Of a stretch of DNA of 64,000 nt, positions 9,001 through 62,125 are shown piece after piece. The notes under the pieces are model-generated. The model ran no database searches. It saw nothing but the letters and a program-made list of their open reading frames with translations, and was not told where the DNA came from. Source of the DNA: Fimbriosthenelais zetlandica (lineage: Eukaryota); assembly GCA_977030845.1 (NCBI GenBank), contig OZ365118.1:18600001-18664000 (forward strand), written 5' to 3'. The number at the start of each line of letters is the position of its first letter. Within the stretch, counting starts at the first letter, position 1. The translations under genes and the position numbers were made by a program.

Positions 9001-11038
9001 TACCAGTATAATGTGTTAAAAGGACCAGTAAATGTTAAAGTACCAGTATATACCGACCTGTGACTGTTGTCCCATCAGTGCCACCTTACTCCTCACCTCA
9101 CACCGCAGCTCAAACCTCTGGTTAACATGTAATAGTAACTCCTGGTAGCTCCACTCAACTCCCGGGCTGACCATGGAGAAATACTGACTGACTCTCAGTC
9201 CTGGCCTCAGTACGTGCGGGCTCAGCAGCCTCCTGATACTGTCACCAATCTGTGTCATCGTCATCTTATCATCTATAATGATGTGGAAGGGAAACGATCG
9301 ACAGATGGTCGCGACAGAGATGGGTAGAGAGCGGGGGTCGCGGGACAGGCGAAATGTGGAGAGGCCGGCTGTACTAACCCCTGAATCCACTCCTGTCCCT
9401 CCTGTCCGCCCCCTTGATGCCCCTGTCCCCCGGTCTGCCCCATGTTGTGACGGAGGTTGACAGTCGGCCCCATGTTGTGACGGGGGTTGACAGTTAATAG
9501 CTAGTATTGTATCACATTCTCTATTCTCCATACTTTTAATCCTAGTTTCCATGTTCTCACCCAGCTGTACGTGTATGTTGAATATTGTACTGGCAGTCTG
9601 AGTGATCACTCCCCGGACTACGCTGATAAAATCCGCGTTATGCGGGTTACTGATATACACGATCAGTCCTCCTGACTTACTCACTTCACAGTTAAATGAG
9701 AGCATGTCCAGATCTTCATCATACCGTCTCCGGCCACGGGATGACCGGTACCGTGTAGGACGGACACTATGACCATTAGCTCTCCGCTGACCATTGCTCG
9801 GCTGACCTGCAGGAATATAAGATGACTGTTAAAATGACCAGTAAGAGGCATAAGTGTATAAAGCCTGGGGCACATAGAGGCGATTCTAACTGACCTGTGG
9901 AGGCTAGTTTGGCATGAATGAGGTGGTGGAAGTCGTCCAGTGAGTTGAGGAAGCTGTGGAGATGGCTGGCGAGTGACCGCAGCTCCTGGTCATACCTCTC
10001 CATGGTCCTGGTCAGCAGGTACTGCCCCGTCTCCTCCAGTAACTCTCCCACGCCTATACCTGATGAGATATACTGATAATGATACATACTTCTATACCTG
10101 ATAACGATATACATCCATATAGGCGGCAACACATCAATCTATCGCCATCCAATTCCCCATTTCTAATTCCATTTAATAATTGAAATTGAGTCAGTGGTCA
10201 GCCTTACCTATAGACTGTTCAATGAGTATAGGATTGTATAAGCCTCACCTAATGCTCGACTGCTCTCCTCCCCTCTCTCCAGCACGCTGTTTATAGTCAT
10301 GTTGCTACCATGGATACAATTGTTGATGACGTCATCTTCTGAGTCAACTTGAGCACTGTCAGATCAAAATCATTTCAGAATAATTCACATTCAAATTTCC
10401 TTTGATAAGATAGACATCAAATCGAAGGAAATATTTTAAATTAAGTCAGAATCTCACCAAGTAAGTTCCTGATGTTTCTCTACACAGTGGAGCAATGCTT
10501 GGAGTAGAGAATACGGCTGAAATGTAAAATAAATGAGAGTAAAGAGGCTCAGACAGAGGTCAATGACTCAATGAGAGAACGCAGGACAAGTACAGTCACT
10601 AACAAGAACTGCTTGATAGGAGTTTTAGTTTCTCTGTTGACTTATAAGATCTTGTAGTTCTTGTTTTAGTTTCTTTGTTGACTTATAGGGTGACTTTATG
10701 TGCTGACTTACTGATGGCATAATGATGCTCTGTACAGCATCCACCATGTGGTCTAGTTGTAATCTCTTGTAATCTCCCTCATCTTCCTCCTCTCCCAGCC
10801 CCTGACTGCTGGCCACTGAGATATTACTGATCTTCCTGGCCACGCCCGTCACGCCTGACTGAACGTCCGTCTCCCTCCCTGCTGGCGACCCCTGACGAGC
10901 TGCTCCCGAGAACGGACACCCTCCCCCCTGGTGGCGAACTCCCTTATCACGCTCAGGGGAAGTAGACGAGGCATTATGGGTAATCATGCGGCTCACATCC
11001 GGGGCTTTGGTGGTTCCTGTCCTCCTGGTGCTCATCAT
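6055..11038 (-). CDS. GUCY1A1: Soluble guanylate cyclase alpha subunit, ~797 aa; exons 10712-11038, 10458-10516, 10249-10355, 9895-10059, 9058-9806, 8389-8568, 8036-8174, 7409-7575, 6940-7083, 6536-6690, 6055-6256
   Basis: All junctions canonical and in phase. Contains the N-terminal GCPFS motif, PAS/HNOB segment (FPFHIIID...[18 protein letters not shown]) and coiled coil. The cyclase domain has both metal-binding Asp ([18 protein letters not shown]) but GHNVTLANK lacks the catalytic N/R, as in alpha subunits. The alpha-type tail [18 protein letters not shown] is present. Start codon choice is uncertain because an acceptor precedes it at 11047-11049. The symbol denotes the GUCY1A1/A2 family. 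Confidence 0.95.
7295..7411. repeat. Short tandem duplication (~3 copies) that includes the sGC-alpha splice donor
   Basis: ctaggagagttagctc(a/g)cctta repeated; on the gene strand each copy reads TAAG|G(T/C)GAGCTAACTCTCC. Confidence 0.85.
7660..7985. repeat. ~62-bp minisatellite (~5 copies) in an sGC-alpha intron
   Basis: Unit ctggcttggtcgttgtactgggaatgccctcccctataataaagcctctaccagtctgttta. Confidence 0.93.
8697..9050. repeat. 41-bp minisatellite (~8.5 copies) in an sGC-alpha intron, abutting the donor at 9057
   Basis: Unit gtaaatgttaaaagtaccagtataatgtgttaaaaggacca. Confidence 0.95.
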
Positions 11039-11765: not shown

Positions 11766-13827
11766 CCCGGGGGTTTGACAAAACCACAGAAAGGAAATAC
11801 CAGTACAATCTTACTGATGGCAGGTGGACGTAGAAGATTTAGTGTGGTTTTACAATCTTATATTAGAAAAAGAATGGACTGAAATAGAACGATACGTAGA
11901 ACTAAGGCAATGTGTATTGGGTTAAGACTTGAACCCACATTTAAGTGACATTTTGCTAACATGAAATATGGATCTATATAGACAGGGCTGAAATGAAAAG
12001 ATAAAGAACTATAAAATAGAAGGCAATGTGTGAACGAGTAAAGACTTTAACCCACATTTTACTGGCATGTATAAAGGCTTACTTCATGTCATGAATGTCG
12101 TGAATGAGACATTAGTACGTCATTACTTAGTGACATGGTAGACATCAATGTGGACAGGAAATATGAGTGTAGTATATATAAAGAAGGAGCATGGGGGCTT
12201 ACCTTGTGGGACTTCCCCCCTATTCCCTCTCTCACCTTGTGGGACTTCCCCTCCTCCTTCTCTCATCTCCCTCTCAACCTTTTAACGCGTCAGGCCAAAT
12301 TATATGATATATGACCCGGTCAATATTCAGTAGATAGGTCTGAATTAAAGAATCAATATTGATCAAAAGGACAGTTACTTCGCCCATTGTCCACAAGGTG
12401 TCACTAGTATTAAAGTTTGTTAATTAAGTTTGGGAACAGGGGACCCATGATAAGTAATTAACGAGTAACCAGCAAAAAGAGTCCTGCCATCTGTGGGCGT
12501 GTAGATGAACTGCTTATCACTCCCTCCCAGCGCTCCCTCCCGGCAGGACTTATAGTCGTTAGTGAGGCTCGAGTGATTTACATGAAAAACTCCCGATTGA
12601 AAACCAAATTGGCGGAGAATTCCCCTATTCCACTCAATGCTTCTACCCTGCCTGGAACCACATCTAGTTTCATTTTCTTGGGACCAAAGGAAAAAGTCCA
12701 ATTAATATTTCCATGTCTCTCTTCCAAAGAAACTTCTAGCTTAGAAAGTACTGTAATTGTAGGCAACAGTTATTATAGGAAATAGTAATTGTAATAAATA
12801 GTAATTATAGGAAACAGTACATCAAATATCGTGGTTTAATACATGTAGTTCCCTATAGCGTCCTGTATGAAGTGACGTCATGAGAGCATATAACGGTAAG
12901 GACGTTAGAAGGTGAAGAGACCGGAAGTGGCTCGTGAAACGCCCCGGGCGTCTGTCACCAGCGCGTGTCAGATGTGTAGAGTTTTAATTAAACTTTAATG
13001 AGTTTATAATTAAATCTTCACATCTTTGTTTAACACTAAGACTTATTGCAGAACGATGCAATTAGTCAAACGGTGGGCTGGAATGATGGCTAGAGGTGCT
13101 GCCCCAGGCGGCGTGTGGAGGTACTATAGGCTCTGATGTATCACTCCTTATAATAAAGGGGGCAATGCTTCCTCTTACTGTCACCAGGCGTCACAGTCTG
13201 TCACATTATGTGACAGTCTGTCACCTTACCCCCCCCCCCCCCCCCCAGTCTGTCTCATGGCAGCTTCTATCTTGGACCAGGTTGCAGCATAGCTTGTGAA
13301 CCAAGGCCGTGTATATATCTTAAGTGACTCTCAAATTTCCAAAGTTCCACCAAGACCTAGTTCCCTTCATTGAGGACAGCTTCTCATACCCTGACTGTCT
13401 GTCACATTTGAGTGTCACTCAAGCATTGCCGATATCTCTCAATCTGATTATATCATAGGTGAAACATTTCCAAGAATATTTAACATAATATTATTGATAG
13501 ACATTCATAAATATTGTTATAAGTTTACAGTCAAATGAGGTGAATTTCTTTTACACTTTTTACACATTCTTGTTTCCGATGTCAGACTAATTGTATTCAT
13601 AATGAATTCCGTGTATTTCTTATTGTATAATTGTTACTTGATAATGGACTTTCTGAACTTCTCGTGGCCCGGGGCTTTCTAAGTTTGTTTTCCTTGACAC
13701 CGCGGGAGAAGGTTGAAGGGAAGAAGTGGTTTTAATGAGCGGGTCAATGAATTGTTGGTGACTTTCATCAAATCCATCCATATTCTCAACGGAAATGGTA
13801 CTAATTAAAATGATCATGTTAACAGGT

Positions 13828-13989
13828 GGGCGGGGGGCGCGGGGGGAGGGTCGGGGGGCGCGGGGGGAGGGGGCGGTCACTCATATATAGATGACGGACG
13901 CACTGGTCAGCCAGTTATTGCTGGACATCAAGACTGACCGTTAAGACGTGACGTGGAACACACCTTGGACATTTTCATTTACTCATAGG
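13828..13989 (+). promoter_or_regulatory. Probable promoter and non-coding first exon of Gly/His-rich gene A
   Basis: GC boxes at 13828-13877, TATATA at 13884-13889, an Inr-like CCAGTT ~27 nt downstream and a donor TAG|gttagt at 13990. The matching acceptor is at 15120-15122. An alternative closer start near 15015-15060 cannot be excluded. Confidence 0.5.
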
Positions 13990-14685
13990 TTAGTATCACT
14001 ATTTTTTGTATTCTTTATTAAATTTCTTTAAAAGTAAAAGTATATATTGATCATGAAATGTTCAATAGTAGGCCTAATCTCTCATATTTGAAGAATTCCT
14101 GTAAATTTGAATTCATGAAATCATTTGAAAGCTGCTGTAACGACAATCTCTTCTGCTGTATATCTAAACCCTACCCCTTATCTAACCCCTGTCCCACCCT
14201 ACCTAACCTTATCCCGACCTAAAGTATTTCTGACATGTATTTCTAGTTTAGAGAGATGGGGAATGGTTGTCTTGAGTTATGAATGTTAAGGATCATGGTT
14301 TATTTGATGATGTATTCAGGAATGTTTGATCTCCCGTGTAGACATGTTTTATTGTCATCTTTTATTGTCATATAGTCTGGTCATCCTGATCGTTAATGCA
14401 CACTAATCTCATGTATATGGATCAATCACTGAGATGTGAGGTATTAAATAATCCATGACTATAAAGTATCTGAAAGATGGAGGTCATTAACTGCTCACTC
14501 TCTCCTTAAAACGCACGTCGCTACTAAGCGGATAGAACCCTCACTTCTGGTATAGACTTGAGCCTGGATCCACCGGCCCATAGAAAGGCAAGGGAGGGTT
14601 CTGTCAAGTTTAGTCACCGACAATTTACTTAACAATCCCCGCCACCAGTCAGGGAGGTCATTATGCTCCCAGTAAATGACCAGTT

Positions 14686-14990
14686 TTGGTAGCTATAATG
14701 TCTGGAAGGGTCGGGTGGATACCAGCTCAATCAGAAGGTCCCGGGTTCAAACCCTCCACTCCTCACAATCATCTGTACTAGCTCTGTCTGCTCATTAAAT
14801 ATTCACATCAATCATAAAACATCCACAAATCAGAGAAGATATCCCGAGGCCTGCTCATATAGCGGCATCACGCGGCCTGCCCATATAGCGGCGGTTGTTA
14901 CCGCCCGGGGGCAGCGTCTCACTATGACGAGAACCATGACATCAAACTCGTGGCTCTCCTTAACATTCCCACTTCATCATTTATACAAAT
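14686..14990 (+). mobile_element. Degenerate tRNA-derived SINE-like element
   Basis: Pol III box-B GGTTCAAACCC at 14744-14754 with an A-box-like TAGCTATAATG upstream, then a GC-rich body. The 3' boundary is approximate. Confidence 0.4.
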
Positions 14991-15145
14991 ACCAGTCATT
15001 AAAATAATAAACTCATATAAGATAATGTTCAGTTCTTTCGGCCTTAAGATCTCTGTGTAGGTACCCATAGTACGTATGTCTAGACTTAATAACCTTCAAA
15101 CTAAATGTTATTTTATTTACAGGTGCCTGAAACAAAATTGCAAAG

Positions 15146-16031
15146 ATGAGAGAAGGCCTCCTATTGGCCCTAATCTCCCTGGGCGTGGTCTGTATTAGCC
15201 AATCAGAGGCGGGCTATGGTGGAGGAGGAGGAGGAGGTCACGGCGGAGGTTATGGCGGAGGTCATGGAGGAGGTCACGGCGGAGGTCATGGCGGAGGTCA
15301 TGGAGGGGGTCATGGAGGAGGTCACGGAGGAGGTCATGGCGGAGGTCACGGTGGGGGTCACGGAGGAGGTCACAGAGGTCACAGAGGAGGAGGGGGTCAC
15401 GGAGGAGGAGGAGGTGGTCACGGAGGAGGGGGGCACCGAGGAGGGGGGCACGGAGGAGGGGGGCACGGAGGGGGTCATGGAGGCGGGGGTGGACATGGCG
15501 GCGTCAGTTTTGGAGGTATTTATAACCTTGTTTCTTACATAACTTACATCTGATCATAAGATTCTCTTGGATGTAGAACATGGTATCAACATTTGTTATC
15601 ATTTGAAGCTGTATATAATATAATCTGACTTTAACTTGTATTCATTTCTTGCAGGGAGCAGTGTGAAGTTTTCTGCAGGTCGAGGCTCCAGTTTCGGTGG
15701 TTATGGTGGTGGTGGGGGAGGTGGAGGGGGAGGAGGCGGGGGAGGTCGGCGTGGTGGGGGAGGTGGGGGTGGACATAGTGGGGGAGGTGGTGGTGGTGGG
15801 GGTGGGTATGGTGGTGGGGGTGGTAATCCAGGGTTCCGTGGGGGACCTCATGGTGGTGTATTTGTTGGTTTTGGTGGGGGTGGTGGCGGTGCCAGTTACG
15901 TCCCTGAAGCCTTCAGTCTCAATAGTTACTTAAAGAGTGGCTCGTCGTACGGAGGTGGGAGTCAGTCTGTACCCAGTGCTTACAGTGTGGGTAGTTATCT
16001 ACAGAGTGGAGGGAGTTACGGCCATTATTAA
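15146..16031 (+). CDS. Secreted Gly/His-rich protein (gene A), 248 aa; exons 15146-15515, 15655-16031
   Basis: Signal peptide MREGLLLALISLGVVCISQSEA, then 10 consecutive GGGH units within a 19-His Gly-rich domain. A phase-1 GT-AG intron follows, then a poly-Gly/Tyr/Phe domain and a duplicated C-terminal VPxA[FY]SxxSYLxSGxSYG motif. Gly codons vary at the third position, as expected for coding DNA. AATAAA at 16396-16401. Confidence 0.88.
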
Positions 16032-18846
16032 ACATACTCTAACACACACCCCGCCATCCTACACTACACTTAGATACAGTAAGTATACTGCACCTCACAG
16101 TACCTCACATCATGCCTGCATTTCATGTTTGATTTTGAACATATTCCATATAATGAAATAATAACAATTCACTTGTATTTTTCAGATCTAAAAAAGTTAA
16201 CCTGTCTCTGCTGAATAATGAAGCTCACACCGGAGACATCTGGTGGAGATGTGAGGAACGAGAGGATGATGTAATGGCCGCCATGGGGAGACGAATCAGA
16301 TGCTAACATCTCTCCTCCTCTCATATCAATTCTCATTAACAGACCCCCAAACTACTCCCCCACAATGGTTAATGGCCACAATGGCCAAGAATGTAAATAA
16401 AAGTTATATTTATAATGAATATATTATATGTCTTCCTTTAATTTCGTTCATTCTAACATGGAGTGCTGTACTGAGTGCCGTATTCTGCCTATATGACACT
16501 CGTCACATACCAGTGAATTCGTCACATATTAATTCATGCTCCTCATCGTGCCATACTTTCAGCATATAGCTCATTCCGTGTGGTGATAGAGGCTATTACA
16601 GATGGCAATTATTATAGTTTCCCTCCTTGACACCAGTCGTTATCAATGGCGCTACCGTCAACTATTTGTACTCAGCTATGTTTCCCTCTTACTATTTTTA
16701 CCAAAGTGACCACACTAGCGCCTGATGAGACCTTTAGGTCGAAACCACTTATCCCATGTTGAGCTACATTTAATCCATATCAAATAAACTATTTATTACT
16801 GCTCTAAACCTGATTACATGCTATATAGGCATGAAAAGGACCTAAAACCATTATTCATAACCTTAACCACCTTTCCAAGCAACCCAACTTTAAGGTTTCC
16901 ATGGGACCACTAACCACTGTCCATTTATGACATAACTATTGTCAAGGTGAGCACAGGTGGAATGTTGTGTGGCAACCCAGCCTTATTGTGGTAGCGCAAA
17001 CAGGCTGTCTATATAATAACACGTCTGTCTCAGCTATGTTTCCACTTCCTTTTATTCATTTTGTCACTTCCAACCTATGGCAATACACATTTAAACAGGA
17101 AGTAGTTGTGTCTAAAAGTGGACGTTTTTCTATAGTTTTTCTATATACATGTACTTATATACTAAGTGGCAGGGCACTCTCAGAGCAAATACTACCCATA
17201 ATATTTCCCTCCCAACTACATATTCCCCAGCTTACTATTCCTATGGATGAACAATATTTGGGGTGGAATAAATAGTGGATTATCATATCAGTGAATGAGA
17301 AAACATGATATGAATGAAAAGATGATGAAAGTAGAGTGAAGTTTATGAGACATCAGTAAGCTAACTGTACGAGGTCTCGCCTGCTGATCCACTATTCACC
17401 ATTACGGTAGAGTGAGTGTTCATTATGTTATGGCAGGTTTTTTCACATGGCATTCATCAGGGCTATCTATATGATAGCCTCGAACAATACGCTACTCACT
17501 TGTTCATCATCCCAAAAGACTTAAGTCTCAAGAAATGTTTTGAATGTTTCCACTAGCCCAAATGACTGAATCATGAAAGATCTGTGACTTTAGAGTGGAG
17601 GTTATATAGAGTTATAGAGAAGTGCCAGGTATGAGTGAGTGGGGGTTGGGATGGTCAGTTTATAGCATTATATGGTTTAATGTTTGTTTAATGATGAATG
17701 TATCATTGTCCCTCATGTCCTACAGCCATGCTCCTCCCCGTGCTACAGCTGTTAGACAATAGGCCACACAATAACCTGATCTGTACATCTATAATTATTA
17801 ATGATTCTCCTTATAAATGATTAAGATCAATCATCAACCTGACCCTCTCCTCTTCCACCTGTCCCCACCTTATTCTTATTCTGAATATTTATAAGAATAT
17901 CCCATATTTATTATAATTATTGGCCGTTTATTGTCTTGTACCTTAATCATAATTTCATAGGAAAACATCCCATTCCGACATGAGCGCCTTTTAGACAAGT
18001 CTTACATTTGTAAACTCAAATATGACATGGCCAAAACCAGCTCTTATTATCTATAAAATATTCCCTATTTACTCTCGATAATTTGAAATTAAGTGATAAA
18101 TAATGACTTGATGTTATATTTTGAGTTGAGGGTACTTAGTACATGTATGGTAATGATCAGTTCATATACTAAGATGTATAAAGTTGTCACAGACAATGCT
18201 TCCCTCGCTGGCAATCACTATTCCCCATTATCTGACGTAGCCTTAAGGAAGGTCACCTCGCTTTCCCAGTAGACTTCCTACGGTTAATCAGATGACTTTT
18301 GCCTTTAAATGATGACATTTCTACGATACCTATGAATTATGAAAACATGTATTCTGACAGAATAAGATGTATTAATGATGTATGGATGTATTAATGTGAG
18401 GCCGGGGGCGGGGTGGTTTGATTAGGGTATGAGGGAGTATATATAGAGGAGAGGTGATGGTAGACAATCATCACAATCAACTCAACTTCTGATAACAGCA
18501 GCAACAGTCGGAGCAATCCCACACCACACACTAAAGTGAGTATAACTTTTACTATAGACACCTATAACTTACTATATAGACACCTGCCTATTTATAACTT
18601 ACTATAGAAACCTCCAGACATATATATATAACTTCTTGGGTCCTGGAAACTGTTATAAAACCTCAATGCAACTTAGTAAATCAGGAATTCTTGTGTCCTT
18701 TGCCTTACGTCTCACTTTACCTACACTTACGATATAATGCGACGTTATGTCTATGTTTTCCTTTACCTATCTTATCTTATGCCTTAAGTTACGTCTATAT
18801 TTGGCTTTCTATGCCTTACGTTGTCCATGTTTACGTTACAGCAATC

Positions 18847-19193
18847 ATGATGAAGCAGTGCATCTTCCTCCTGGCCGTCATGGTCGCCCTTGCAGCCGGT
18901 CAGTATAAACCCCACTAATCTTTACTTCATGTGTCGTACTGTCATCCTTTATTATTATATTGAGTTCTTTATTGAGTTTATTATACATTTTGTATTTGTT
19001 CTCTTCAGCTCAGTATAACAGTTATACCGGCTACAATCCCCAATACTCCAGCTACGGCCACGGTAACAACCAAGGACAGGGATACGGATACGGCTATGGA
19101 TACGGCCATGGCGGCAATGGCAATGGCAATGGCAATGGTTACGGCTACGGTTACGGAAGGAGCAACAGCGGCTACGGCTATAGTGCTTATTAG
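18847..19193 (+). CDS. Small secreted Gly/Tyr/Asn-rich peptide (gene B), 78 aa; exons 18847-18898, 19009-19193
   Basis: GC box plus TATATATA (18438-18445), and a non-coding exon ending at 18535 (AAA|gtgagt). The signal-peptide exon MMKQCIFLLAVMVALAA makes a phase-1 junction to QYNSYTGYNPQ...GYGYGYGYGHGGNGNGNGNGYGYGYG...SAY*. AATAAA at 19383-19388. Confidence 0.85.
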
Positions 19194-19922
19194 TGGAATA
19201 ACACTACATACATGGCCTACCTCTTCACAATGGTGGGCCTTCCTATTATATTGCTAATTATGATTATTATCTTTCCAACTATTAGAAATGTAAGTGTAAG
19301 CTATCAATACTGATTCATTCTCCATCTTTTCCAGGTGTCAAGGAACGTGCCTCAAGACATGCGTGGTGGTTGATTATTCAAAAATAAAATGACATTAAAA
19401 CCTATATATTTTGTTCGTGATTTTTGATACTTTGTTTATTTCATTTATTTAATCTTTGTGCTATCCAAAAACCTCAGTTAAAACCATGACTCGAACTGAC
19501 TGAGAGTTCTCAGACGGCTTCCAGAGGGATTGTGTATTGTTAAAGTGTATTGTCACGTTCCACCTGTTTTATACAAGCTCAATATCCCCAGGTATCCCCA
19601 GATATCACTAGATATCCCCTTATATCACTAGATATCCCCAGATATCACTATACTGGCCGCCTGTCACGGCTGACCTGTCGTCACGGACCCACCATTATGT
19701 CCTCCTGTCAAGCGTGACGTCACGAACGCTCGTTAAGTCACGTGGGGAGGAAGCTGCACCTTTTCCATGGTAACAGATGAGTAGAGGAATAGATGTTAAT
19801 ATGGTGGTGAGGTATATAAAGCCGGGAGGTGGGCAATGGTCATCATCACAGCTGTATCTGCCCTCACCTGAGGTAGTCAAAGTATTATAGAACTTTATAC
19901 ACAGGAGAAAGGTGTAGACGAC

Positions 19923-21008
19923 ATGGATATGAGACGAGAGATGCTATTGGCTGTGGTGGTACTGGTGACTTCAATCCTCCACCAATCACAGGCCATGGGA
20001 CAAAGTCCAGTCCAGGTTGGCCCAGGCTACAGCCAGGGTCACCACGATCCACCCCAGGCTGCCCCAGGCTACAGTCAGCCTGCTCCAGGCTACAGCCAGC
20101 CTGCCCCAGCCTTTACAGAGTTTACAGGGCCTCACTCCATGTATAGTGGACCAGGGATGACCCCTGACAGTCATATGTACGGTCACTTTACACCTGGATT
20201 CACACCTGGTGCCGGTATGTACCATACTGGACATGATACCGGTATGATGCCCCACCCCATGCCTAATACAGGCCTGTATATACACGACCCTAACACAGGT
20301 ACTCACCTAGTCCCCCACCCAGACATATACAGGCCTGACGCCGCGGGCTATGGTCAGTCAAATGGTCACTCAATGAACTATAACCCTACAGGTGGACTAA
20401 CAGTGAAGGCTGGTGAGATGATAGGAGCTGGACATAATGTGAGGGCTGGGTACGGTCAGCCTGCAGGCTGGACTGACCAATACTCAGGTCCTATTGATGG
20501 CCTGGGTCCGGCTGCAATCAATGGACATAGCCTGGGTATGAGTGGATATGGCCACAGTGGTCAATTGACCATTGGAGGGCATAAAGTGACCGGTGGAGGG
20601 AGTCCGGTATCAGCGGATTACACGCCCGCTGGGTCTACTCCTGGTTATGGTACAGTCCACAGTCAGATTATACCAGCATCAGAATATGACACAGTCCACA
20701 GTCAGATTATACCAGAATATGACTCAGCGAGAAGTAGTGGATATATACAGACAATGAGTAGTGGACAAGTGAGTAAAGCTGGCAAAGTGAGTAGCAGTAT
20801 GTATGGACAGTCAGGTAGTCATGGGTACGATGCCAGTAGTCATGGATACGGTGCCAGTAGCCATGGATACGATGCCAGTAGTCATGGATACGATGCCAGT
20901 AGCCATGGATACGATGCCGGTAGCCATGGGAAGGGCACAAATAATGGAAAGATCTACCTGAACCGGGGAAATAGCCTTGGCTATAACGAGGTGCGATGGG
21001 GAATATAA
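19923..21008 (+). CDS. Secreted His/Tyr/Gly/Pro/Ser-rich protein (gene C), 361 aa, apparently single coding exon
   Basis: TATATAAA at 19813-19820 and a 361-codon ORF with signal peptide MRREMLLAVVVLVTSILHQSQA. It has GYSQ(PAP) repeats, a duplicated TVHSQIIP and five (G/S)SHGY(D/G)A heptads (20814-20930). AATAAA at 21126-21131. Confidence 0.87.
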   Translation: MDMRREMLLAVVVLVTSILHQSQAMGQSPVQVGPGYSQGHHDPPQAAPGYSQPAPGYSQPAPAFTEFTGPHSMYSGPGMTPDSHMYGHFTPGFTPGAGMYHTGHDTGMMPHPMPNTGLYIHDPNTGTHLVPHPDIYRPDAAGYGQSNGHSMNYNPTGGLTVKAGEMIGAGHNVRAGYGQPAGWTDQYSGPIDGLGPAAINGHSLGMSGYGHSGQLTIGGHKVTGGGSPVSADYTPAGSTPGYGTVHSQIIPASEYDTVHSQIIPEYDSARSSGYIQTMSSGQVSKAGKVSSSMYGQSGSHGYDASSHGYGASSHGYDASSHGYDASSHGYDAGSHGKGTNNGKIYLNRGNSLGYNEVRWGI

Positions 21009-24000
21009 ACTCTATAAACTATAAACTGTATGAACTATAAACCCTAGAACTCTGTCTCGTCATGTCGACCTTATCCGTTCATTTATCATGGATTATTTTG
21101 TATGATTTTAGACATGTTATTTTGCAATAAATTTCATAACAAAAATAACCCAAGTGCAGACTAAATATTTAGATGTCATTTGATATCTGTGTGGCCCCAG
21201 GAGCATTGGTTATTTCTACGTTATTATATCATGATGTATTTGTATAGGCTGTGTTCCTATCATAATGTCAAGATCTGTCAAGTGACATCTAGCTGAGTTT
21301 AGGAATACTAACTGGTACTAAGGTGATTGTAGTAAGCTGGAAGTGATGCTAATGTCTGAAGACAGTGTGAATTTAATTTGGTCTCAATTCCGGACACGGG
21401 GAGGATTTCACTTCCGCTGTTCCCTGAGCCTCCTCCTAGCGCCATCTATGTAGACGGAAGTCAACTTAGGTCTAATTCATTTAGTCTGAGCCCACGTGAT
21501 CAGAGGTAGGCCAGCTGTGATAGGAGGAGAGGTAGCCAATGAGATGTCTCCACAGTGGCGTCCCCTGCTGATTAGATTGGACACTTTCAGACTAATTTTG
21601 TTGTAATCTGATAGATGTGTGAATTATACCATACAGAGAATGTGAACAAACTAATTAGCATGGATAGGCTACCCTCGATCTACTCTACACTATTTTCATA
21701 CTATATTTGACGAAATGACAATATTTTGAAATGAACAAATACTGTATAAGATTGCCAGTAGTATATAATTAGTAAGTAGAGGGAAATACTTCCTGATCCA
21801 GTCAGTAAGAGCGAGTATTTCTATCACTCTGCTCTCTCCATCTCTCTGTGCCTTCATCTCATGTAAAGTGGTTTCTGATTGGCTGAAGTATTTGGTGATG
21901 GATGGCCTGCAGGATGTAAAGCCTGCTCTGATTGGTCACGCAGCGTGTCGGACATGTTGGATGTATTCGGAAATCTCCACAAAGGTGGATGGGAAAGTAA
22001 TCCTGTCCTCGAAATATCTACAGGTGTTTTTACATGGGCTGATATTTATTTCACCTGGCTGGAATATTTCCCTTTGTGAGATGGAAGTTGTGTACTTATG
22101 TTATAATATTTGCCATGCCTACTCCACCCCCTACACCCCACCCATTACCCACCCCAACCCCCGCCTCTTGTAATCTATACCTCCTCCATCAGCCTCATGT
22201 TTTTTGTTCACGTCTCATCAAACTTCAAAGAGAGTATGAAGTTAATCCTGTAAGAGTTAGCCCAGGAGTTAGCTGAGAGATTAGAGCCTCTACTTGACCT
22301 CTACCTGACCTCTATATACCTCACCAGCTGACTCTTTATATCTAACGTCACTGTACGTCTGTCACCATGGTGATCTAGCGTACTGTGACGTCACTGTACC
22401 CTACTTCTTCATGGAGATCTGGTGTAGTACTTTACAGTCTGTCCACCTTTCCCATAATGCATCACGGCTCCTCCATTGAATGTTATAAGAGGTACTTCCT
22501 GTTCACCACGTGACAGTCAAGCGACCAATCAGAACACAGCCTGATATAGAGCAGAGATTAGTGAGTAAATCACCAGGCCTCATCCTGTTACACCAGTCCG
22601 GATTAACGGCCGATTATAGATTAAAGGGATTAAAGTGAATTCCTCCCTCTACCCTGTAATCTCCTACCGTCAGAATGAAGCAGAAATAAAGGAGTAAAGT
22701 GGATATATTGATGACTAATGCTCGATCCAATTTAACCTGCTATTAGTCTCCTACATGACTATAGACTCCTCTATTGACTGCTGATAAAGCCAGCATTTAT
22801 ACCATCCTGTGCTCGGGTTATTATTCAGGTACATGCTTTGTAGGTCTATGATGATATCTACGTTTTTATAACATTTATATTTATTCGAGAGAAATGCATT
22901 TGTTGCTGACATTTCATAAAGCCTCCATACAAGGATAATGTTCAGTTACAAATATGATCTCACACACTCTTATACCATATTGCAAATGATATAGGCTTAT
23001 TCCATATTGTAAATGATATATAGGCCATGTTGCAAATGATATATATAGGCTTACGCCATGCTATAAATGATACAGGCCCTGTTTCCTCTTATCACTGTCC
23101 GTTCATGTTAATAACCGTTAACAGACTTGTTGATGTAGGTGAAGCCTGGTGCACTGGTTGACTCCAGCCTTCATCCTGCCTCTGTGTGGAGGTGTAGGGT
23201 GAGAGTTGAGGCTGTTTGTACTCATTGCTTCCTCTTCTACTAAGTGTTCCAATCTAAACCATTAGGACCATGTATACATCACCACTACTCCTCCAACTCC
23301 CTGCTAACTTCTCCTATACTGTGATGAGAATGCCGGCTACAAGTGTTAGAGTGCTAAATGGTGCTCTCTGCAGGTCTACAGAGATCAACAAGGCTGAACT
23401 AATCTTCTATTGTGCTGAACTCCTAACTAACTATTTGAGAGTTCCAGTCATTTTGATAGCTGATAGCTGAAGCTAAAGCTGCCATCTCCGACTCAAAAGT
23501 TCAGGGAGCTACAGAACTATTAAGTAGACTTTCTATACAGGGCAGAAGTTTCTACTTTATTCTAAATGCTCATTTTAAAAGCATTTTTGAAATCATGAGC
23601 TATTGCAGTGAGCAGTGGCCTGGGGTGGGGAGGTGGGGAGGTGGGTCCGGGTGTATGGAGGGTAGGGAGGCGGGGGCGAGGAGCCAGCATAGTAAAGCCC
23701 CCCGTGAAGTCTGAATGCCTCTCATTAGACTTTAGACTTCTGGTTTCCCACCAGGAAACATGGCTTCACTGACACCACTTGTACATGTCAATCTATAGAG
23801 GATATACGCGTCAAAATACCATGAATCATCATGTATAAAGTGGCTATATTTACTCTATCTGCTTCTCATCTCATTATAACTCATACATTTATACATTCAT
23901 CGTGACAGTATGAGCAGGTAATGAGGGCTATACTGTATTATACTCTGATGAAATGATTTTAACGATGCTCTTATAGCATGTCTGGTTCAGAGAATATCTA

Positions 24001-50241: not shown

Positions 50242-53200
50242 ATGGTGAGTAGCTCTGAGCAGCAGCCAGGATTCAATGTTTGCCTTCTTTTAGTCTATAT
50301 ATTTGCTTTATTTGCTTTTACACGTGTTTTAACAACATTGTACAAGACATAAAGCGTGAGATTATGTAGGGAATGAACAGGTAGCCGGGGAAAATCTATC
50401 CTTATTTTTGTATGGAGCTAATCTACGTGTTTCACGTACATTTACTTTAACAGAGACCTATAATGGGCTCTCTGACTTTATTACTGGTACTGTCATGATT
50501 GTACATTTGGTGCCGTTTTCCTCACACCGTAACTTGATAATAAAAGACGATCCAGGTCTCATTAACATAATTAATTCTTCCAGTGATTGGCGAGCGAGCA
50601 TGTTTTGAGATTTATTTTATTCTGACTTTTTATTCCAGTACGGATTTGTGAACTACGCTCTCGAGCTCCTTGTGCTGAGGAACTTTGGGGAAGCGATATG
50701 GGAGGATATCAAGTAAGTAACTACCATGTATCAATCATAAAAGTTTATCCTCTCTCTCATTCCCTTTCTCTTCTCTCTTCTCTCTCTTTCTCTTCTCTCT
50801 TCTCTCTCTCATTCTCTAACTCGATCATGTGATGACTGGAGAAGGTCACGTTAGGTGATTGAAAGCTTAGAAGTACAATCAATCACTTGTGTTAAAAAGA
50901 AACGAAATCCTAAACTGTACATATTACGTGAATGAATGTTTTAACGACGTGGTGCTGCACATGTACATTAAGTGAATGAATGTATCAACCATGTGGTATG
51001 TTTTGTCTGTCAGACGGGAAGCCTCGCTGGAGATGGAGGGTCACTTCCTCATCCGACTCGTCTACGATGATGCTATATCGTATGCCCTGGTCGGAGCAGC
51101 TTCTAAAGTCCTCAGTAAGTTAAACTTCTAACCTTTTATCATTGTTCAATATATTAGGAGTTTTTCAGCTTTTCAATGGGGGTCCTTTTCATGATAACAT
51201 ATATAGGCCTAACTTAGGCATATATTATTAATTCTAGAATGCTTTCAGAACATCATTCTACTCTCTAGGGAAATGGGGCAGATGGAAGTTGGTGACTAGC
51301 CCCCCCCCCCCCCCCCCCCCAATCAGTGATCAGTGATTGGTGTTTAATGTGACCTTGTCTTTCTTCCCACCAGATGTACCAGCTGACGACATTCTGGAGA
51401 TGTTCGGGTGTATGTTCTTTGACTTCTGTCAGGAGTCCGGCTATCAGAGTATCCTCCAGGTGTTAGGTTCTACCACCAGGGACTTCCTCCAGAACTTGGA
51501 CGCTCTCCATGACCACCTGGCCACCATCTACCCCGGCATGCGAGCACCCAGCTTCTGCTGCACCGAGAGGCCTGAAGACGGCGCCACCATACTCCATTAC
51601 TACTCTGAACGCGAGGGTCTGGAGAGCATCGTGATAGGTATCGTTAAAACGGTGGCCAAGAAGCTTCATGAGACAGAGGTGGACGTGAAGGTGTATAAGA
51701 CTAAAGCTGACGGTATTGATCATGTTCAGTTCCTGATCCTGGAGTCAGGAGAGAGCCAGGAGGTGAGCACTAAGACTAGTAAAGTCTACCAAGACGTCCT
51801 CTCAGACCAGCCCAAGATCAGCCCCGATTCCTTCGCTACGGTCTTCCCGTTCCACCTGATGTTTAATCAGGACCTGCGGATTATCCAGGCTGGTAAATCC
51901 ATCCAGCGGTTAATCCCGGAGATTAACTGCTCAACCACGTGTCATATGAGTGAGGTGTTTGTCATGGTGCGGCCACACATGGACTTTACGTTCTCTAACA
52001 TTACGTCCCATGTTAACACCATCTACGTGCTGTCGTCACGTCCTGCCGTCCACCTGACCGGCTGTCAGGAGGCGGGAGCCAGTCTACGTCTGAAGGGAGA
52101 GATGGTGTGGGTTCAGGAGAGTGACGCTCTACTCTTCCTGTGCTCACCTGCCGCCGCCTCGCTGGATGAACTCTGTCGTCTGGGGATGTTCCTCAGTGAT
52201 ATACCGCTTCATGATGCCACCCGTGATCTGGTTCTCCTGTCAGAGGAGTTCCACTCACAATATAAACTGACACGCAGGCTAGAGCTGCTCAATGATAAAC
52301 TCCAACAAACCTACCAGGAGCTGGCTGACGAGAAGAAGAAAACAGACAAGTAGGACTCTCACTTATTTTATTTTAATAATCTCTATTGACAGTAACTCCC
52401 TCTTATACCACCATCTCTCTATTGACAGTAGTTGAAACCTTCTATCTCTGTATGTAAGCCTTCTATCTCTGTATGTAAACCTTCTATCTCTGTATGTATG
52501 CCTTCTATCTCTGTATGTAAGCCTTCTATCTCTGTATGTAAGCCTTCTATCTCTGTATATAAGCCTTCTATCTCTGTATGTAAACCTTCTATCTCTGTAT
52601 GTATGTCTTCTATCTCTCTGTATGTAAGCCTTCTATCTCTGTATGTAAGCCTTCTATCTCTGTATGTAAGCCTTCTATCTCTGTATGTATGCCTTCTATC
52701 TCTGTATGTAAACCTTCTATCTCTGTATATAAGCCTTCTATCTCTGTATGTAAACCTTCTATCTCTGTATGTAAGCCTTCTATTTCTGTATGTAAGCAAT
52801 TCTATCTCTGTATGTATGTCTTCTATCTCTCTGTATGTAAGCCTTCTATCTCTCTGTATGTAAGCCTTCTATCTCTGTATGTAAGCCTTCTATCTCTGTA
52901 TATAAGCCTTATATCTCTGTATGTAAGCCTTCTATCTCTGTATGTAAGCCTTCTATCTCTGTATATAAGCCTTCTATCTCTGTATGTAAACCTTCTATCT
53001 CTGTATGTATGTCTTCTATCTCTCTGTATGTAAGCCTTCTATCTCTGTATGTAAGCCTTCTATCTCTGTATGTATGCCTTCTATCTCTGTATGTAAACCT
53101 TCTATCTCTGTATATAAGCCTTCTATCTCTGTATGTAAACCTTCTATCTCTGTATGTAAGCCTTCTATTTCTGTACGTAAGCAATTCTATCTCTGTATGT

Positions 53201-56200
53201 ATGTCTTCTATCTCTCTGTATGTAAGCCTTCTATCTCTGTATGTAAGCCTTCTATCTCTGTATGTAAGCCTTCTATCTCTGTATATAAGCCTTATATCTC
53301 TGTATGTAAGCCTTCTATCTCTGTATGTAAGCCTTCTATCTCTGTATATAAGCCTTCTATCTCTGTATGTAAACCTTCTATCTCTGTATGTATGTCTTCT
53401 ATCTCTCTGTATGTAAGCCTTCTATCTCTGTATGTAAGCCTTCTATCTCTGTATGTAAGCCTTCTATCTCTGTATATAAGTCTTCTATCTCTGTATGTAA
53501 GCCTTCTATCTCTGTATGTAAGCCTTCTATCTCTCTGTATGTATGTCTTCTATCTCTGTATGTAAGCCTTCTATCTCTGTATGTAAGTCTTCTATCTCTG
53601 TATGTAAGCCTTCTATCTCTGTATATAAGCCTTCTATCTCTGTATGTAAGCCTTCTATCTCTGTATGTAAGCCTTCTATCTCTGTATATAAGCCTTCTAT
53701 CTCTGTATGTATGTCTTCTATCTCTGTATGTAAACCTTCTACCTCTGTATGTATGTCTTCTATCTCTCTGTATGTAAGCCTTCTATCTCTGTATGTAAGC
53801 CTTCTATCTCTGTATGTAAGCCTTCTATCTCTGTATGTATGCCTTCTATCTCTGTATGTAAACCTTCTATCTCTGTATATAAGCCTTCTATCTCTGTATG
53901 TAAACCTTCTATCTCTGTATGTATGTCTTCTATCTCTGTATGTATGCCTTCTATCTCTGTATGTATGCCTTCTATCTCTGTATGTAAGCAATTCTATCTC
54001 TGTATGTAAGCCTTCTATCTCTGTATGTAAGCCTTCTATCTCTGTATATAAGCCTTCTATCTCTGTATGTAAACCTTCTATCTCTGTATGTATGTCTTCT
54101 ATCTCTGTATGTATGCCTTCTATCTCTGTATGTATGCCTTCTATCTCTGTATGTAAGCAATTCTATCTCTGTATGTATGTCTTCTATCTCTGTATGTAAG
54201 CCTTCTATCTCTGTATGTAAGCCTTCTATCTCTGTATGTAAGCCTTCTATCTCTGTATGTATGCCTTCTATCTCTGTATGTAAACCTTCTATCTCTGTAT
54301 ATAAGCCTTCTATCTCTGTATATAAGCCTTCTATCTCTGTATGTAAGCCTTATATCTCTGTATGTAAGCCTTATATCTCTGTATGTAAGCCTTCTATCTC
54401 TGTATGTATGTCTTCTATCTCTGTATGTATGCCTTCTATCTCTCTGTATGTAAGCCTTCTATCTCTGTATGTAAACCTTCTATCTCTGTATGTAAGCCTT
54501 CTATCTCTGTATGTATGCCTTCTATCTCTCTGTATGTAAGCCTTCTATCTCTGTATGTAAACCTTCTATCTCTGTATGTAAGCCTTCTATCTCTGTATGT
54601 AAGTCTTCTATGTCTGTATGTAAGCCTTCTATCTCTGTATGTAAGCCTTCTATCTCTGTATGTAAGCCTTCTATCTCTGTATGTAAGCCTTCTATCTCTG
54701 TATTTAAGCCTTCTATCTCTGTATATAAGCCTTCTATCTCTGTATGTAAACCTTCTATCTCTGTATGTATGTCTTCTATCTCTCTGTATGTAAGCCTTCT
54801 ATCTCTGTATGTAAGCCTTCTATCTCTGTATGTAAGCCTTCTATCTCTGTATGTAAGCCTTCTATCTATGTATGTAAGCAATTCTATCTCTGTATGTAAG
54901 CCTTCTATCTCTGTATGTATGCCTTCTATCTCTGTATGTAAACCTTCTATCTCTGTATATAAGCCTTCTATCTCTGTATGTAAGCCTTCTATCTCTGTAT
55001 GTAAGCCTTCTATCTCTGTATGTAAGCCTTCTATCTCTGTATGTAAGCCTTCTATCTCTGTATGTAAACCTTCTATCTCTGTATATAAGCCTTCTATCTC
55101 TGTATGTATGCCTTCTATCTCTGTATGTAAACCTTCTATCTCTGTATATAAGCCTTCTATCTCTGTATGTAAGCCTTCTATCTCTGTATGTAAGCCTTCT
55201 ATCTCTGTATGTAAGCCTTCTATCTCTGTATGTAAGCCTTCTATCTCTGTATGTAAGCAATTCTATCTCTGTATGTAAGCCTTCTATCTCTGTATGTAAG
55301 CCTTCTATCTCTGTATATAAGCCTTCTATCTCTGTATGTAAGCCTTCTATCTCTGTATGTAAGCCTTCTATCTCTGTATGTAAGCCTTCTATCTCTGTAT
55401 GTAAGCCTTCTATCTCTGTATGTAAGCAATTCTATCTCTGTATGTAAGCCTTCTATCTCTGTATGTAAGCCTTCTATCTCTGTATGTAAGCCTTCTATCT
55501 CTGTATGTAAACCTTCTATCTCTGTATATAAGCCTTCTATCTCTGTATGTATGCCTTCTATCTCTGTATGTAAACCTTCTATCTCTGTATATAAGCCTTC
55601 TATCTCTGTATGTAAGCCTTCTATCTCTGTATGTAAGCCTTCTATCTCTGTATGTAAGCCTTCTATCTCTGTATGTAAGCCTTCTATCTCTGTATGTAAG
55701 CAATTCTATCTCTGTATGTAAGCCTTCTATCTCTGTATGTAAGCCTTCTATCTCTGTATGTAAGCCTTCTATCTCTGTATGTAAACCTTCTATCTCTGTA
55801 TATAAGCCTTCTATCTCTGTATGTATGCCTTCTATCTCTGTAAGTCTTCTATCTCTGTAAGTCTTCTATCTCTGTATGTATGCCTTCTATCTCTGTATGT
55901 ATGTCTTCTATCTCTGTATGTATGCCTTCTATCTCTGTAAGTCTTCTATCTCTGTAAGTCTTCTATCTCTGAACATGTATATAACTGTTCCCTGTCTCTG
56001 TCCTCAGGTTGATGTACTCAGTGCTGCCCCCATCTGTCGCGGATGATCTCCGCAACAAGCGTCCGGTTCACCCGCGACGTTACGATCAGGTTACGGTCCT
56101 CTTCAGTGGTATCGTCGGCTTTAACGAGTTCTGCGCCAAACATTCTGACCAGGCTGGAGCAAGAAAAATAGTCCAGGTGCTCAACGACCTCTACACTACG

Positions 56201-61088: not shown

Positions 61089-61380
61089 CCTTTCCACACC
61101 CCCTTGTGAATTTCCTAATAGTTTTTTATACGAGAGGATTCATTTGAGATAATATAATATTCTAAATGGTGTATGACTGCCGAAGCCAAAGTATTAATAA
61201 AAAGGACATTCTGAAGTGAAGTGAAGTGTTTTCAATTTGTCTCCTATCATGCTGAGGCGTTCTGTGAGTTCAAACTCATCCTATCATATCATGCTGGGGG
61301 GTTCTGTGAGTTCAAACTCATCCTATCATATCATGCTGAGGCGTTCTATGACTCAGACGGCGTTAGACACTACATACACT

Positions 61381-62125
61381 TCAGACGAGGTCACTTGACC
61401 AGTCTCAAGATAAATCCCTCATTTCCCACTCTTATACACCAATTGACCACCCCGATTTGACTAAGACTGTGTCAGACACTTCAGAGACCTCAGAGACCTC
61501 AGACGAGGTCACTTGACCAGTCTCAAGATAAATCCCTCATTTCCCACTCTTATACACCAATTGACCACCCCGATTTGACTAAGACTGTGTCAGACACTTC
61601 AGAGACCTCAGACACCTCAGACGAGGTCACTTGGCCAGATAAAGCCCTCATTTCCCACTCTTATACACCAATTGACCACCCCGATTTGACTAAGACTGTG
61701 TCAGACACTTCAGAGACCTCAGACACCTCAGACGAGGTCACTTGACCAGTCTCAAGATAAATCCCTCATTTCCCACTCTTATACACCAATTGACCACCCC
61801 GATTTGACTAAGACTGTGTCAGACACTTCAGAGACCTCAGACACCTCAGACGAGGTCACTTGACCAGTCTCAAGATAAATCCCTCATTTCCCACTCTTAT
61901 ACACCAATTGACCACCCCGATTTGACTAAGACTGTGTCAGACACTTCAGAGACCTCAGAGACCTCAGACGAGGTCACTTGACCAGTCTCAAGATAAATCC
62001 CTCATTTCCCACTCTTATACACCAATTGACCACCCCGATTTGACTAAGACTGTGTCAGACACTTCAGAGACCTCAGAGACCTCAGACGAGGTCACTTGGC
62101 CAGATAAAGCCCTCATTTCCCACTC
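61381..62125. repeat. ~118-bp tandem repeat (~6.3 copies)
   Basis: Unit cagacgaggtcacttgaccagtctcaagataaatccctcatttcccactcttatacaccaattgaccaccccgatttgactaagactgtgtcagacacttcagagacctcaga(g/c)acct; one copy is shorter. Confidence 0.95.

What the first reader, a model, noticed from the sequence alone, without database searches (positions are those of the whole stretch)
15146..16031. Gene A: (GGGH)n poly-His/Gly protein with a duplicated ordered C-terminal motif
Seen: 19 His in a ~95-residue stretch that is otherwise almost all Gly plus a few Arg. A His-poor poly-Gly domain follows on its own exon, then two copies of VPxA[FY]SxxSYLxSGxSYG (~15897-16028). Regularly spaced His suggests Zn/Cu coordination or pH-triggered coacervation. 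An alternative is a Gly/His-rich antimicrobial protein, since beetle holotricin-3 has GGGH repeats. The C-terminal motif may be an assembly or chitin-contact module that I do not recognise.
Basis: partly seen in the sequence, partly recalled or inferred. Interest (0 to 1): 0.7.

Follow-up and report, generated by a model that had tools for sequence, protein, structure and literature searches.

The report
Orphan secreted glycine-histidine repeat protein gene
A marine-worm-type genome holds a one-copy gene that looks intact, for a secreted, floppy protein made mostly of glycine with evenly spaced histidines. It is built like known metal-binding jaw, glue or antifungal proteins, but it has no detectable relatives and no expression data, so its job is still a guess.

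Summary
Splicing 15146-15515 to 15655-16031 (GT-AG, 139-nt AT-rich intron, phase 1) gives a 248-aa protein. It has four parts:
- a 22-aa signal peptide;
- a 101-residue block of 74 Gly, 19 His and 3 Arg, with ten perfect GGGH units;
- a 77-residue poly-Gly block;

Three results argue for coding constraint in this frame:
- All DNA differences among the ten units are at third codon positions.
- The two tail motifs share 12/18 residues but only 33/54 bases (dN 0.37, dS about 2.5).
- No shuffle of 2000 reaches that match.

Pfam, a full HMMER scan of 1.84 billion proteins, a word search and the ESM Atlas found no relative. The tail has no second copy in the genome. No sequencing run was listed, so expression is untested. 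AlphaFold2 sees no fold.

Best reading (0.42): a matrix protein that self-assembles on a pH or metal switch. Main rival (0.27): a holotricin-3-like Gly/His host-defence protein.

The scan noted His-rich or Gly/Tyr/His-rich secreted genes elsewhere in this genome (s1-223631, s1-191757). I found two more GGGH-bearing secreted genes, on contigs C1 and C10.

The parts
15146..15211 (+). Start codon and 22-residue signal peptide (hydrophobic core, Ser at -3, Ala at -1, cleavage before Gly-Tyr)
   Evidence: residues 4-17 have mean Kyte-Doolittle hydropathy 2.79 and the -3/-1 rule is met. This is a rule-of-thumb reading; no predictor was run.
15212..15514 (+). Gly/His block, residues 23-123: 74 Gly, 19 His, 3 Arg, 2 Tyr
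   Evidence: It is a tandem repeat of period 12 with about 17.7 copies.
15254..15373 (+). Ten perfect GGGH units (residues 37-76)
   Evidence: the units differ only at codon position 3 (70 of 70 pairwise differences). The pattern search finds them at the same place.
15516..15654 (+). Intron, 139 nt, GT...AG, phase 1, 28% GC, pyrimidine tract before the AG
   Evidence: Inferred from sequence only; no RNA evidence.
15655..15884 (+). Poly-Gly block (residues 124-200): 50 Gly of 77, Gly runs up to 14, punctuated by Phe, Tyr, Arg and Ser; only 2 His
15885..16028 (+). Ser/Tyr-rich tail (residues 201-248): 13 Ser, 10 Gly, 7 Tyr; ends ...SYGHY
15900..15953 (+). Tail motif copy 1 (residues 206-223)
15969..16022 (+). 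Tail motif copy 2 (residues 229-246). It shares 12/18 residues and 33/54 bases with copy 1, with 8 synonymous and 6 non-synonymous codon differences.
   Evidence: NG86 gives dN 0.37 and dS about 2.5.
16029..16031 (+). Stop codon TAA
16396..16401 (+). Only AATAAA within 600 nt after the stop: putative poly(A) signal
   Evidence: inferred.
15121..15122 (+). Possible 3' splice site (pyrimidine run then AG) 23 nt before the ATG. If used, a non-coding first exon lies further upstream, and the two upstream ATGs at 15076 and 15105 are removed.
   Evidence: Inferred; the 5' end of the gene is unknown and no TATA-like box lies within 250 nt.

Best explanation
Gene A is an intact-looking, single-copy, lineage-restricted gene with two coding exons. 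It encodes a secreted, cysteine-free, intrinsically disordered polycation. The mature protein is 226 residues, about 18.9 kDa, 59% Gly and 9.7% His, with calculated pI about 10.2. It is a triblock: a (GGGH)n block, a poly-Gly block punctuated by aromatic and Arg residues, and a Ser/Tyr tail carrying an old internal duplication.

Most likely it is a matrix component of an extracellular material such as jaw, bristle, tube, glue or cuticle, and it sets by a histidine switch. The inferred steps are:
1. In an acidic secretory compartment the 22 imidazoles are protonated (calculated net charge about +28), which keeps the chains apart.
2. At sea-water-like pH the charge drops to about +8.
3. The free imidazoles, one every fourth residue on a fully flexible Gly backbone, can then bridge Zn or Cu between chains.
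4. The protein condenses into a coacervate, gel or fibril.
5. The Tyr-rich tail supplies aromatic and hydrogen-bond stickers, or sites for oxidative cross-links.

Shown here: the gene anatomy, composition, charge arithmetic, signs of purifying selection and lack of relatives. Inferred: secretion, metal binding, condensation, tissue and role.
For: - **Gene anatomy.** ATG, a signal-like peptide, a GT-AG intron in the right phase, a stop and AATAAA.
- **Constraint in this frame.** Repeat units differ only at third codon positions. The tail motif copies have dN 0.37 against dS about 2.5.
- **Charge switch.** Calculated from composition.
- **Disorder.** No fold was predicted (pLDDT 50), which fits a disordered protein.
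- **Precedents in the literature.** Cu drives phase separation of Glycera MTP, and Zn drives amyloid-like assembly of Nvjp-1 (PMC9999432). Zn turns the GGH peptide shepherin I into fibrils, and its repeat acts as a polymorphic multi-His site (PMC10698721).
- **Cluster context.** Gene A heads a 6-kb cluster with two other unrelated secreted, Cys-free Gly/Tyr/His-rich genes.
- **Genome context.** The genome has two more secreted GGGH-bearing genes. One on contig C1 is 53% Gly and 21% His. One on C10 flanks a Cys-rich domain. Several different proteins sharing one chemistry is the pattern seen in material proteomes.
Against: - **No expression evidence.** No run was listed, so the tissue is unknown.
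- **His content is low for the class.** 9.7% overall and 19% in the block, against 27% in Nvjp-1 and 40% in MTP.
- **The closest printed look-alike is an antifungal blood protein.** Holotricin 3 is not a material protein.
- **No conservation found.** I found no orthologue. A 37-kb walk upstream of the neighbouring guanylate cyclase gene in a distant relative showed no such gene.
- **Weak ORF evidence.** G-rich repeats keep several frames open by themselves, so an open frame alone says little.
- **Host animal unverified.** I did not check the identity of the animal or whether it has hardened parts.
Confidence: 0.42

Rival explanations
1. Host-defence protein. On this reading Gene A is a secreted Gly/His-rich antimicrobial or antifungal protein of the holotricin-3, tenecin-3 or shepherin kind. 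It may be cut into smaller peptides, for example at the Arg-Arg pair in the poly-Gly block, and may be activated by Zn.
For: - Holotricin 3 as printed in PMC5715947 has seven GGGH units (my hand count), a Gly run with Arg/Ser and ends ...THGY. It is 84 aa and 64% Gly. Gene A's His block is 73% Gly and 19% His in GGGH units, and the protein ends ...SYGHY.
- Shepherin I needs Zn to form antifungal fibrils.
- Neighbouring Gene B, and other small secreted Gly/Tyr/His peptides in this genome, look like the Gly/Tyr-rich defence peptides of nematodes. That comparison rests on my own knowledge and was not tested.
Against: - The mature protein has 226 residues. That is about twice the longest Gly-rich antimicrobial peptide listed in PMC5031766 (ctenidins, up to 120 aa).
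- Half of it is a His-poor poly-Gly block plus a Ser/Tyr tail, which those peptides lack.
- The passages I read of one review of aquatic invertebrate peptides name no annelid Gly/His-rich peptide.
- There are no paralogues, whereas defence peptides usually form families.
- Similarity to holotricin 3 is compositional. It could not be tested as homology.
Confidence: 0.27
2. Extracellular Gly-rich protein whose histidines are not a metal or pH switch. It could be an elastic or space-filling 'glycine loop' matrix, a mucus protein or an egg-coat protein, with the aromatic residues and the tail doing the binding and His incidental.
For: - Gly runs of 5-14 residues are flanked by Tyr, Phe or Arg through the middle block.
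- The tail motif, not the His array, is the part with the clearest sign of selection on specific residues.
Against: Ten perfectly kept His codons, with only synonymous change among the units, argue that the His positions themselves are kept.
Confidence: 0.15
3. Not a working gene. The open frame would then be a by-product of a G-rich minisatellite next to a chance ATG, or a very young gene that is not expressed or has no role.
For: - No relatives in any database.
- No expression data.
- Other frames over the repeat are open too.
- The promoter and 5' end are undefined.
Against: - A signal-like peptide sits right after the ATG.
- The intron is in the exact phase, with a sharp GC drop.
- All indels in about 370 nt of slippage-prone repeat keep the frame.
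- Variation among the repeat units is third-position only.
- The two tail motif copies are conserved in protein but scrambled at synonymous sites.
Confidence: 0.12

Closest known systems
Holotricin 3 (Holotrichia diomphalia antifungal haemolymph protein) and tenecin 3
   Same: Secreted, over 60% Gly, His placed in GGGH units, a Gly run with Arg, and a C-terminal aromatic/His end.
   Different: Holotricin 3 is 84 aa against 226. It has no long His-poor poly-Gly block and no duplicated Ser/Tyr tail. It is a beetle protein. Homology was not testable here, and the likeness may be convergent.
Nereis jaw protein Nvjp-1 / Nai11527
   Same: Secreted annelid Gly/His-rich disordered protein. His-Zn coordination hardens the jaw, and Zn and pH trigger assembly.
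   Different: Nvjp-1 is 27% His, 36% Gly, about 15% Asp+Glu and 7% Tyr, with GGH and GH motifs. Mature Gene A is 9.7% His and 59% Gly, with no Asp and one Glu. No sequence relation was found.
Glycera jaw multi-tasking protein (MTP)
   Same: Low-complexity Gly/His protein with short tri- and tetrapeptide repeats. Cu binding drives phase separation.
   Different: MTP is 40% His and never has more than two Gly in a row. It has no Tyr. Gene A has Gly runs up to 14 and a Tyr-rich tail.
Shepherin I (Capsella bursa-pastoris)
   Same: A regular Gly-Gly-His array that acts as a polymorphic multi-His site for Cu/Zn. Zn triggers fibril formation.
   Different: A 28-aa plant peptide with a tripeptide unit and 29% His.
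Sabellariid tube-cement proteins (Pc-1/Pc-2 Gly-rich, Pc-4/Pc-5 and Sa-5 His-rich, Sa-3C SY-rich plus GY-rich diblock)
   Same: Annelid secreted basic Gly-rich or His-rich block proteins with Tyr. Sa-5 is 8.6% His, close to Gene A's 9.7%.
   Different: They have different repeat units and are Lys-rich. No sequence relation was tested or seen.

Membership tests
Nvjp-1 / Nai11527 jaw proteins | Detectable sequence similarity to Nvjp-1 (Nai11527 matches it at BLAST E 2e-11, PMC13120676) | tested here: inconclusive
   Exon 2 against 1.84 billion representatives gave 0 hits. The exon 1 word search returned only weak compositional hits; the three that carry a source name are bacterial or generic, and its length filter (68-215 aa) would exclude a jaw protein of 32-53 kDa.
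Nvjp-1 / Nai11527 jaw proteins | Composition: His about 16-27%, Gly 29-36%, many Asp/Glu | tested here: not met
   Mature Gene A has His 9.7%, Gly 59.3%, Asp 0 and Glu 0.4%, against the figures.
Nvjp-1 / Nai11527 jaw proteins | Found in the Zn-rich jaw tip | not testable with these tools
   No expression or proteome data; no run listed.
Glycera MTP | [quoted passage not shown] | tested here: not met
   Gly runs of 5-14 residues at eight places; His 9.7%.
Holotricin-3-type Gly/His antifungal proteins | More than 60% Gly with repeated GGGH units | tested here: met
   18 GGGH units. The His block is 73% Gly and 19% His. Holotricin 3 has seven units by my hand count and is 64% Gly.
Holotricin-3-type Gly/His antifungal proteins | Small mature peptide (about 80 aa) made only of the Gly/His region | tested here: not met
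   The mature protein has 226 aa, with a poly-Gly block and a Ser/Tyr tail.
Holotricin-3-type Gly/His antifungal proteins | Antifungal activity; induction by infection | not testable with these tools
   Needs an assay.
   No Pfam family at E up to 1 for either exon. There are no Cys for a CBM14-type fold.

The most novel reading that the evidence does not exclude
Gene A, its two cluster neighbours, and the two other GGGH-bearing secreted genes on contigs C1 and C10 are a lineage-specific Gly/His/Tyr toolkit for a material that is set by metal or pH. On this reading the toolkit arose independently of Nvjp-1 and MTP, and the duplicated Ser/Tyr tail motif is a previously undescribed assembly element.
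Probability: 0.25. Interest if true: 0.55.

Novelty: new variant of a known kind. Interest (0 to 1): 0.33.

Why it matters
Gly/His-rich secreted proteins are the working parts of metal-hardened worm jaws, mussel threads and squid beaks, and of some antifungal peptides. They are also models for synthetic self-healing and pH-set polymers.

A clean triblock of (GGGH)10-plus, poly-Gly and a Tyr-rich tail would be a very simple natural design for testing how His spacing and spacer length set metal-driven condensation.

If the gene is expressed in a material-forming gland, it would be another independent origin of this chemistry. If it is induced by infection, it would be, as far as the papers I read show, an annelid example of the beetle-type Gly/His antifungal design.

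Without expression data it remains a well-formed candidate, not a discovery.

Tried and rejected
- **Pfam.** Both exons and Genes B and C gave nothing meaningful.
- **HMMER.** Exon 2 against 1.84 billion representatives gave 0 hits.
- **Word-based search, exon 1.** Eleven hits at E 2e-4 to 9e-3, all compositional. The few that carry a name are bacterial or generic.
- **Word-based search, Gene C.** It gave nothing, not even itself, so this genome's proteins are probably not in that collection.
- **ESM Atlas.** Three queries gave a best score of 0.75 to an arthropod DUF4766 cluster, below any useful level.
- **AlphaFold2, exon 2.** No fold, so no fold search was worthwhile.
- **Synteny.**
  - The soluble guanylate cyclase beta exon at 51409-52353 has a 66%-identical counterpart on a 3.45-Mb ENA contig.
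  - I walked about 37 kb upstream of it in three steps (one search failed on a one-codon slip).
  - There was no Gly/His-rich frame there.
  - The relative is too distant for this to count against the gene.
- **BLASTP.** Gene A against the C1 Gly/His protein gave no alignment, because low-complexity masking removes everything.
- **BLASTN without masking.** Similarity is confined to the repeat array, so a shared origin of the GGGH module is neither shown nor excluded.
- **RNA genes nearby.** No tRNA or Rfam family lies in 13000-22000.
- **Shared promoter motif.** No shared upstream motif among Genes A, B and C turned up in a repeat scan.
- **Holotricin 3 alignment.** The comparison is by counted motifs only.

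Full report
**1. What is in the sequence.**
- An ATG at 15146 opens a frame that reads 22 residues with a hydrophobic core, Ser at -3 and Ala at -1. A Gly/His array follows.
- The frame meets a GT at 15516.
- The next 139 bases are 28% GC, against 66% and 58% in the flanking coding parts. They end in a pyrimidine run and AG at 15653-15654.
- Exon 1 ends in phase 1. The two bases 15655-15656 complete a Gly codon and continue exactly in the frame of the downstream ORF, which runs to TAA at 16029-16031.
- The spliced CDS is 747 nt and the protein 248 aa.
- If the intron were kept, the product would be 135 aa and stop at 15551-15553.
- A second AG at 15677-15678 would also keep the frame and drop eight residues.
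- The only AATAAA within 600 nt after the stop is at 16396.
- The 5' end is not defined. No TATA-like box lies within 250 nt. Two upstream ATGs (15076, 15105) precede a good acceptor-like site at 15121-15122, so a non-coding first exon further upstream is likely (inference).

**2. Check of the observation.**
- Residues 23-123 hold 74 Gly, 19 His, 3 Arg and 2 Tyr.
- His spacing is exactly four for ten units (residues 37-76) and 3-8 elsewhere in the block.
- The second exon starts with a 77-residue block of 50 Gly, with Gly runs up to 14 and only 2 His. It ends in a 48-residue tail with 13 Ser, 10 Gly and 7 Tyr.
- All the stated facts hold.

**3. Is it more than a repeat artefact?**
- The His array is a 12-nt tandem repeat, and G-rich repeats leave several frames open. 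An open frame alone therefore proves little.
- The ten perfect units differ from each other only at third codon positions: 70 of 70 pairwise differences, in variable columns 3, 6 and 12 of the unit.
- Every length change in the 370-nt array keeps the frame.
- The two tail motifs share 12 of 18 residues but only 33 of 54 bases. Eight of the twelve shared residues use different codons.
- NG86 gives dN 0.37 and dS about 2.5, which is saturated. No shuffle of 2000 reaches 12 identities.
- The duplication is therefore old and the motif has been kept at the protein level. With only 18 codons the numbers are rough, but the direction is clear.
- Together with the signal-like start and the exact splice phase, I put the chance that this is a real protein-coding gene in this frame at close to 0.9.

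**4. Properties.**
- The mature protein has 226 aa and about 18.9 kDa. It is 59% Gly, 9.7% His, 8.8% Ser and 4.9% Tyr, with no Cys or Asp and one Glu. Its calculated pI is about 10.2.
- Calculated net charge is about +28 at pH 5.5 and about +8 at pH 8.2. Nearly all of the change sits in the His block.
- Single-sequence AlphaFold2 on exon 2 gives mean pLDDT 50, pTM 0.10 and no secondary structure. The tail scores lowest.
- This fits disorder, but a prediction from one sequence is weak evidence.

**5. Relatives.**
- Pfam found nothing for either exon.
- Exon 2 against 1.84 billion representatives found nothing.
- Exon 1 in the word-based search gave only weak compositional hits.
- The ESM Atlas gave nothing usable.
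- In the animal's own 447-Mb assembly the tail has no second copy.
- Gene C also has no relatives, not even a self-hit, so this genome's proteins are probably not in those collections.
- No sequencing run was listed, so expression could not be examined.

**6. Context in the window.**
- Gene A is followed by Gene B (18848-19193, two exons), a peptide of about 60 residues rich in Tyr, Gly and Asn.
- Gene C (19923-21008) follows: one 361-codon frame with a signal-like start, rich in His, Tyr and Pro, with five SSHGYDA-like heptads.
- The three proteins are unrelated to one another in sequence. All are secreted-looking and lack Cys after the signal peptide.
- The cluster lies between two soluble guanylate cyclase subunit genes that point away from each other. 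HNOB/HNOBA exons are at 9016-10132 on the minus strand and at 51337-52353 on the plus strand.
- In a distant relative (66% identity in that exon), about 37 kb upstream of the beta gene holds no Gly/His-rich frame. At that distance this says little.

**7. Context in the genome.**
- A pattern search for three GGGH units in a row found two further loci.
- On contig C1 (9186338-9187270, minus strand) one uninterrupted 311-codon frame encodes a signal-like start. The mature part is 53% Gly and 21% His, with Phe, Asp and a short non-repetitive centre. That composition is much closer to the published jaw proteins than Gene A's.
- On C10 (about 195335-195934, minus strand) an exon encodes a Cys-rich domain flanked by GGGY/GGGH arrays.
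- The commonest C1 unit (GGC-GGA-GGT-CAT) also occurs in Gene A and in the C10 gene. Similarity stops at the edges of the arrays, so a shared origin of the module is possible but not shown.
- Small secreted Gly/Tyr/His peptides ending in ...HY also exist elsewhere in the genome.
- Earlier notes of this scan describe other secreted His-rich or Gly/Tyr/His-rich genes in the same genome (s1-223631, s1-191757). They call the animal an annelid. I did not verify the taxon. The named guanylate cyclase hits only show a protostome-like invertebrate.

**8. How it most likely works.**
- The shared mechanism of all the closest analogues is assembly driven by histidine.
  - Cu triggers phase separation of Glycera MTP (PMC9999432).
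  - Zn and a rise in pH turn Nvjp-1 into insoluble beta-rich fibrils (PMC9999432).
  - Zn turns the GGH peptide shepherin I into antifungal fibrils, and its regular repeat acts as a sliding, polymorphic multi-His site (PMC10698721).
- Gene A offers 19 imidazoles at near-constant spacing on a Gly backbone, a large calculated charge drop between granule-like and sea-water-like pH, and a Tyr-rich tail.
- I therefore commit to a secreted protein that self-assembles on a pH or metal switch.
- For the role, I favour a material matrix protein (0.42). My reasons are its size, the long spacer block, the conserved tail, the cluster with two other unrelated low-complexity secreted genes, and the several GGGH proteins in the genome.
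- The main rival is host defence (0.27). Holotricin 3 is the nearest printed look-alike, with seven GGGH units (my hand count), a Gly run with Arg and a ...THGY end. Gene A, however, is about 2.7 times longer and half of it is unlike any listed Gly-rich peptide.
- Two lesser rivals remain: a Gly-rich matrix in which His plays no switching part (0.15), and a non-functional frame (0.12).

**9. Membership.**
- It is not a member of the Nvjp-1 or MTP groups by composition. MTP never has more than two Gly in a row, and Nvjp-1 is acid-rich and three times richer in His.
- It meets the GGGH and Gly-content feature of the holotricin-3 type but not its size or its single-block build. Homology could not be tested.
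- It has no chitin-binding profile.
- It works like these systems at most by analogy.

**10. Verdict.**
- This is a new variant of a known, repeatedly evolved kind of protein, with no expression evidence yet. Interest is modest.

Noticed in passing
G000:C1:9186338-9187270 (minus strand; L017 801-1733): A single 311-codon frame for a signal-bearing protein whose mature part is 53% Gly and 21% His, with 26 GGGH units, Phe, Asp and a short non-repetitive centre. Its composition is much closer to published worm jaw proteins than Gene A's. No similar gene lies within 10 kb on either side.
   Followed up: partly
G000:C10:195335-195934 (minus strand; L020 1002-1601): An exon encoding a Cys-rich domain flanked on both sides by GGGY/GGGH arrays that use the same codon pattern as Gene A. 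No Pfam match. It may be the kind of gene noted earlier as s1-191757.
   Followed up: partly
window 18848-19193 and 19923-21008: Gene B is a two-exon gene for a Tyr/Gly/Asn-rich peptide of about 60 residues. Gene C is a 361-codon His/Tyr/Pro-rich frame with five SSHGYDA-like heptads and a TATA-like box at 19813. Both follow Gene A on the same strand. Gene C has no relatives in the word-based protein search.
   Followed up: partly
window 9016-10132 (minus) and 51337-52353 (plus): Two soluble guanylate cyclase subunit genes (HNOB/HNOBA exons) lie head to head about 40 kb apart, with the three orphan secreted genes between them.
   Followed up: partly
window about 14590-14700: A dispersed repeat about 450-550 nt upstream of Gene A's ATG, with at least 40 copies at 71-93% identity across the genome. 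It contains a GGTTCAAACCC stretch like a tRNA T-arm, but ARAGORN and Rfam find nothing.
   Followed up: partly
L007 1465-1680 (+), L009 1441-1770 (-), L011 1440-1740 (-): Small secreted Gly/Tyr/His-rich peptides elsewhere in the genome (contigs C25 and C1), each with a signal-like start and ending in ...HY, as Gene A does.
   Followed up: no
window 52438-55939: A 21-nt satellite of about 166 copies at 92% match, directly after the guanylate cyclase beta exon and presumably in its intron. Another array, of 118-nt units, lies at 61376-62103.
   Followed up: no
window 15677-15679: A second acceptor-like AG 24 nt into exon 2 would keep the frame and remove eight residues. It is a possible alternative splice form.
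   Followed up: no
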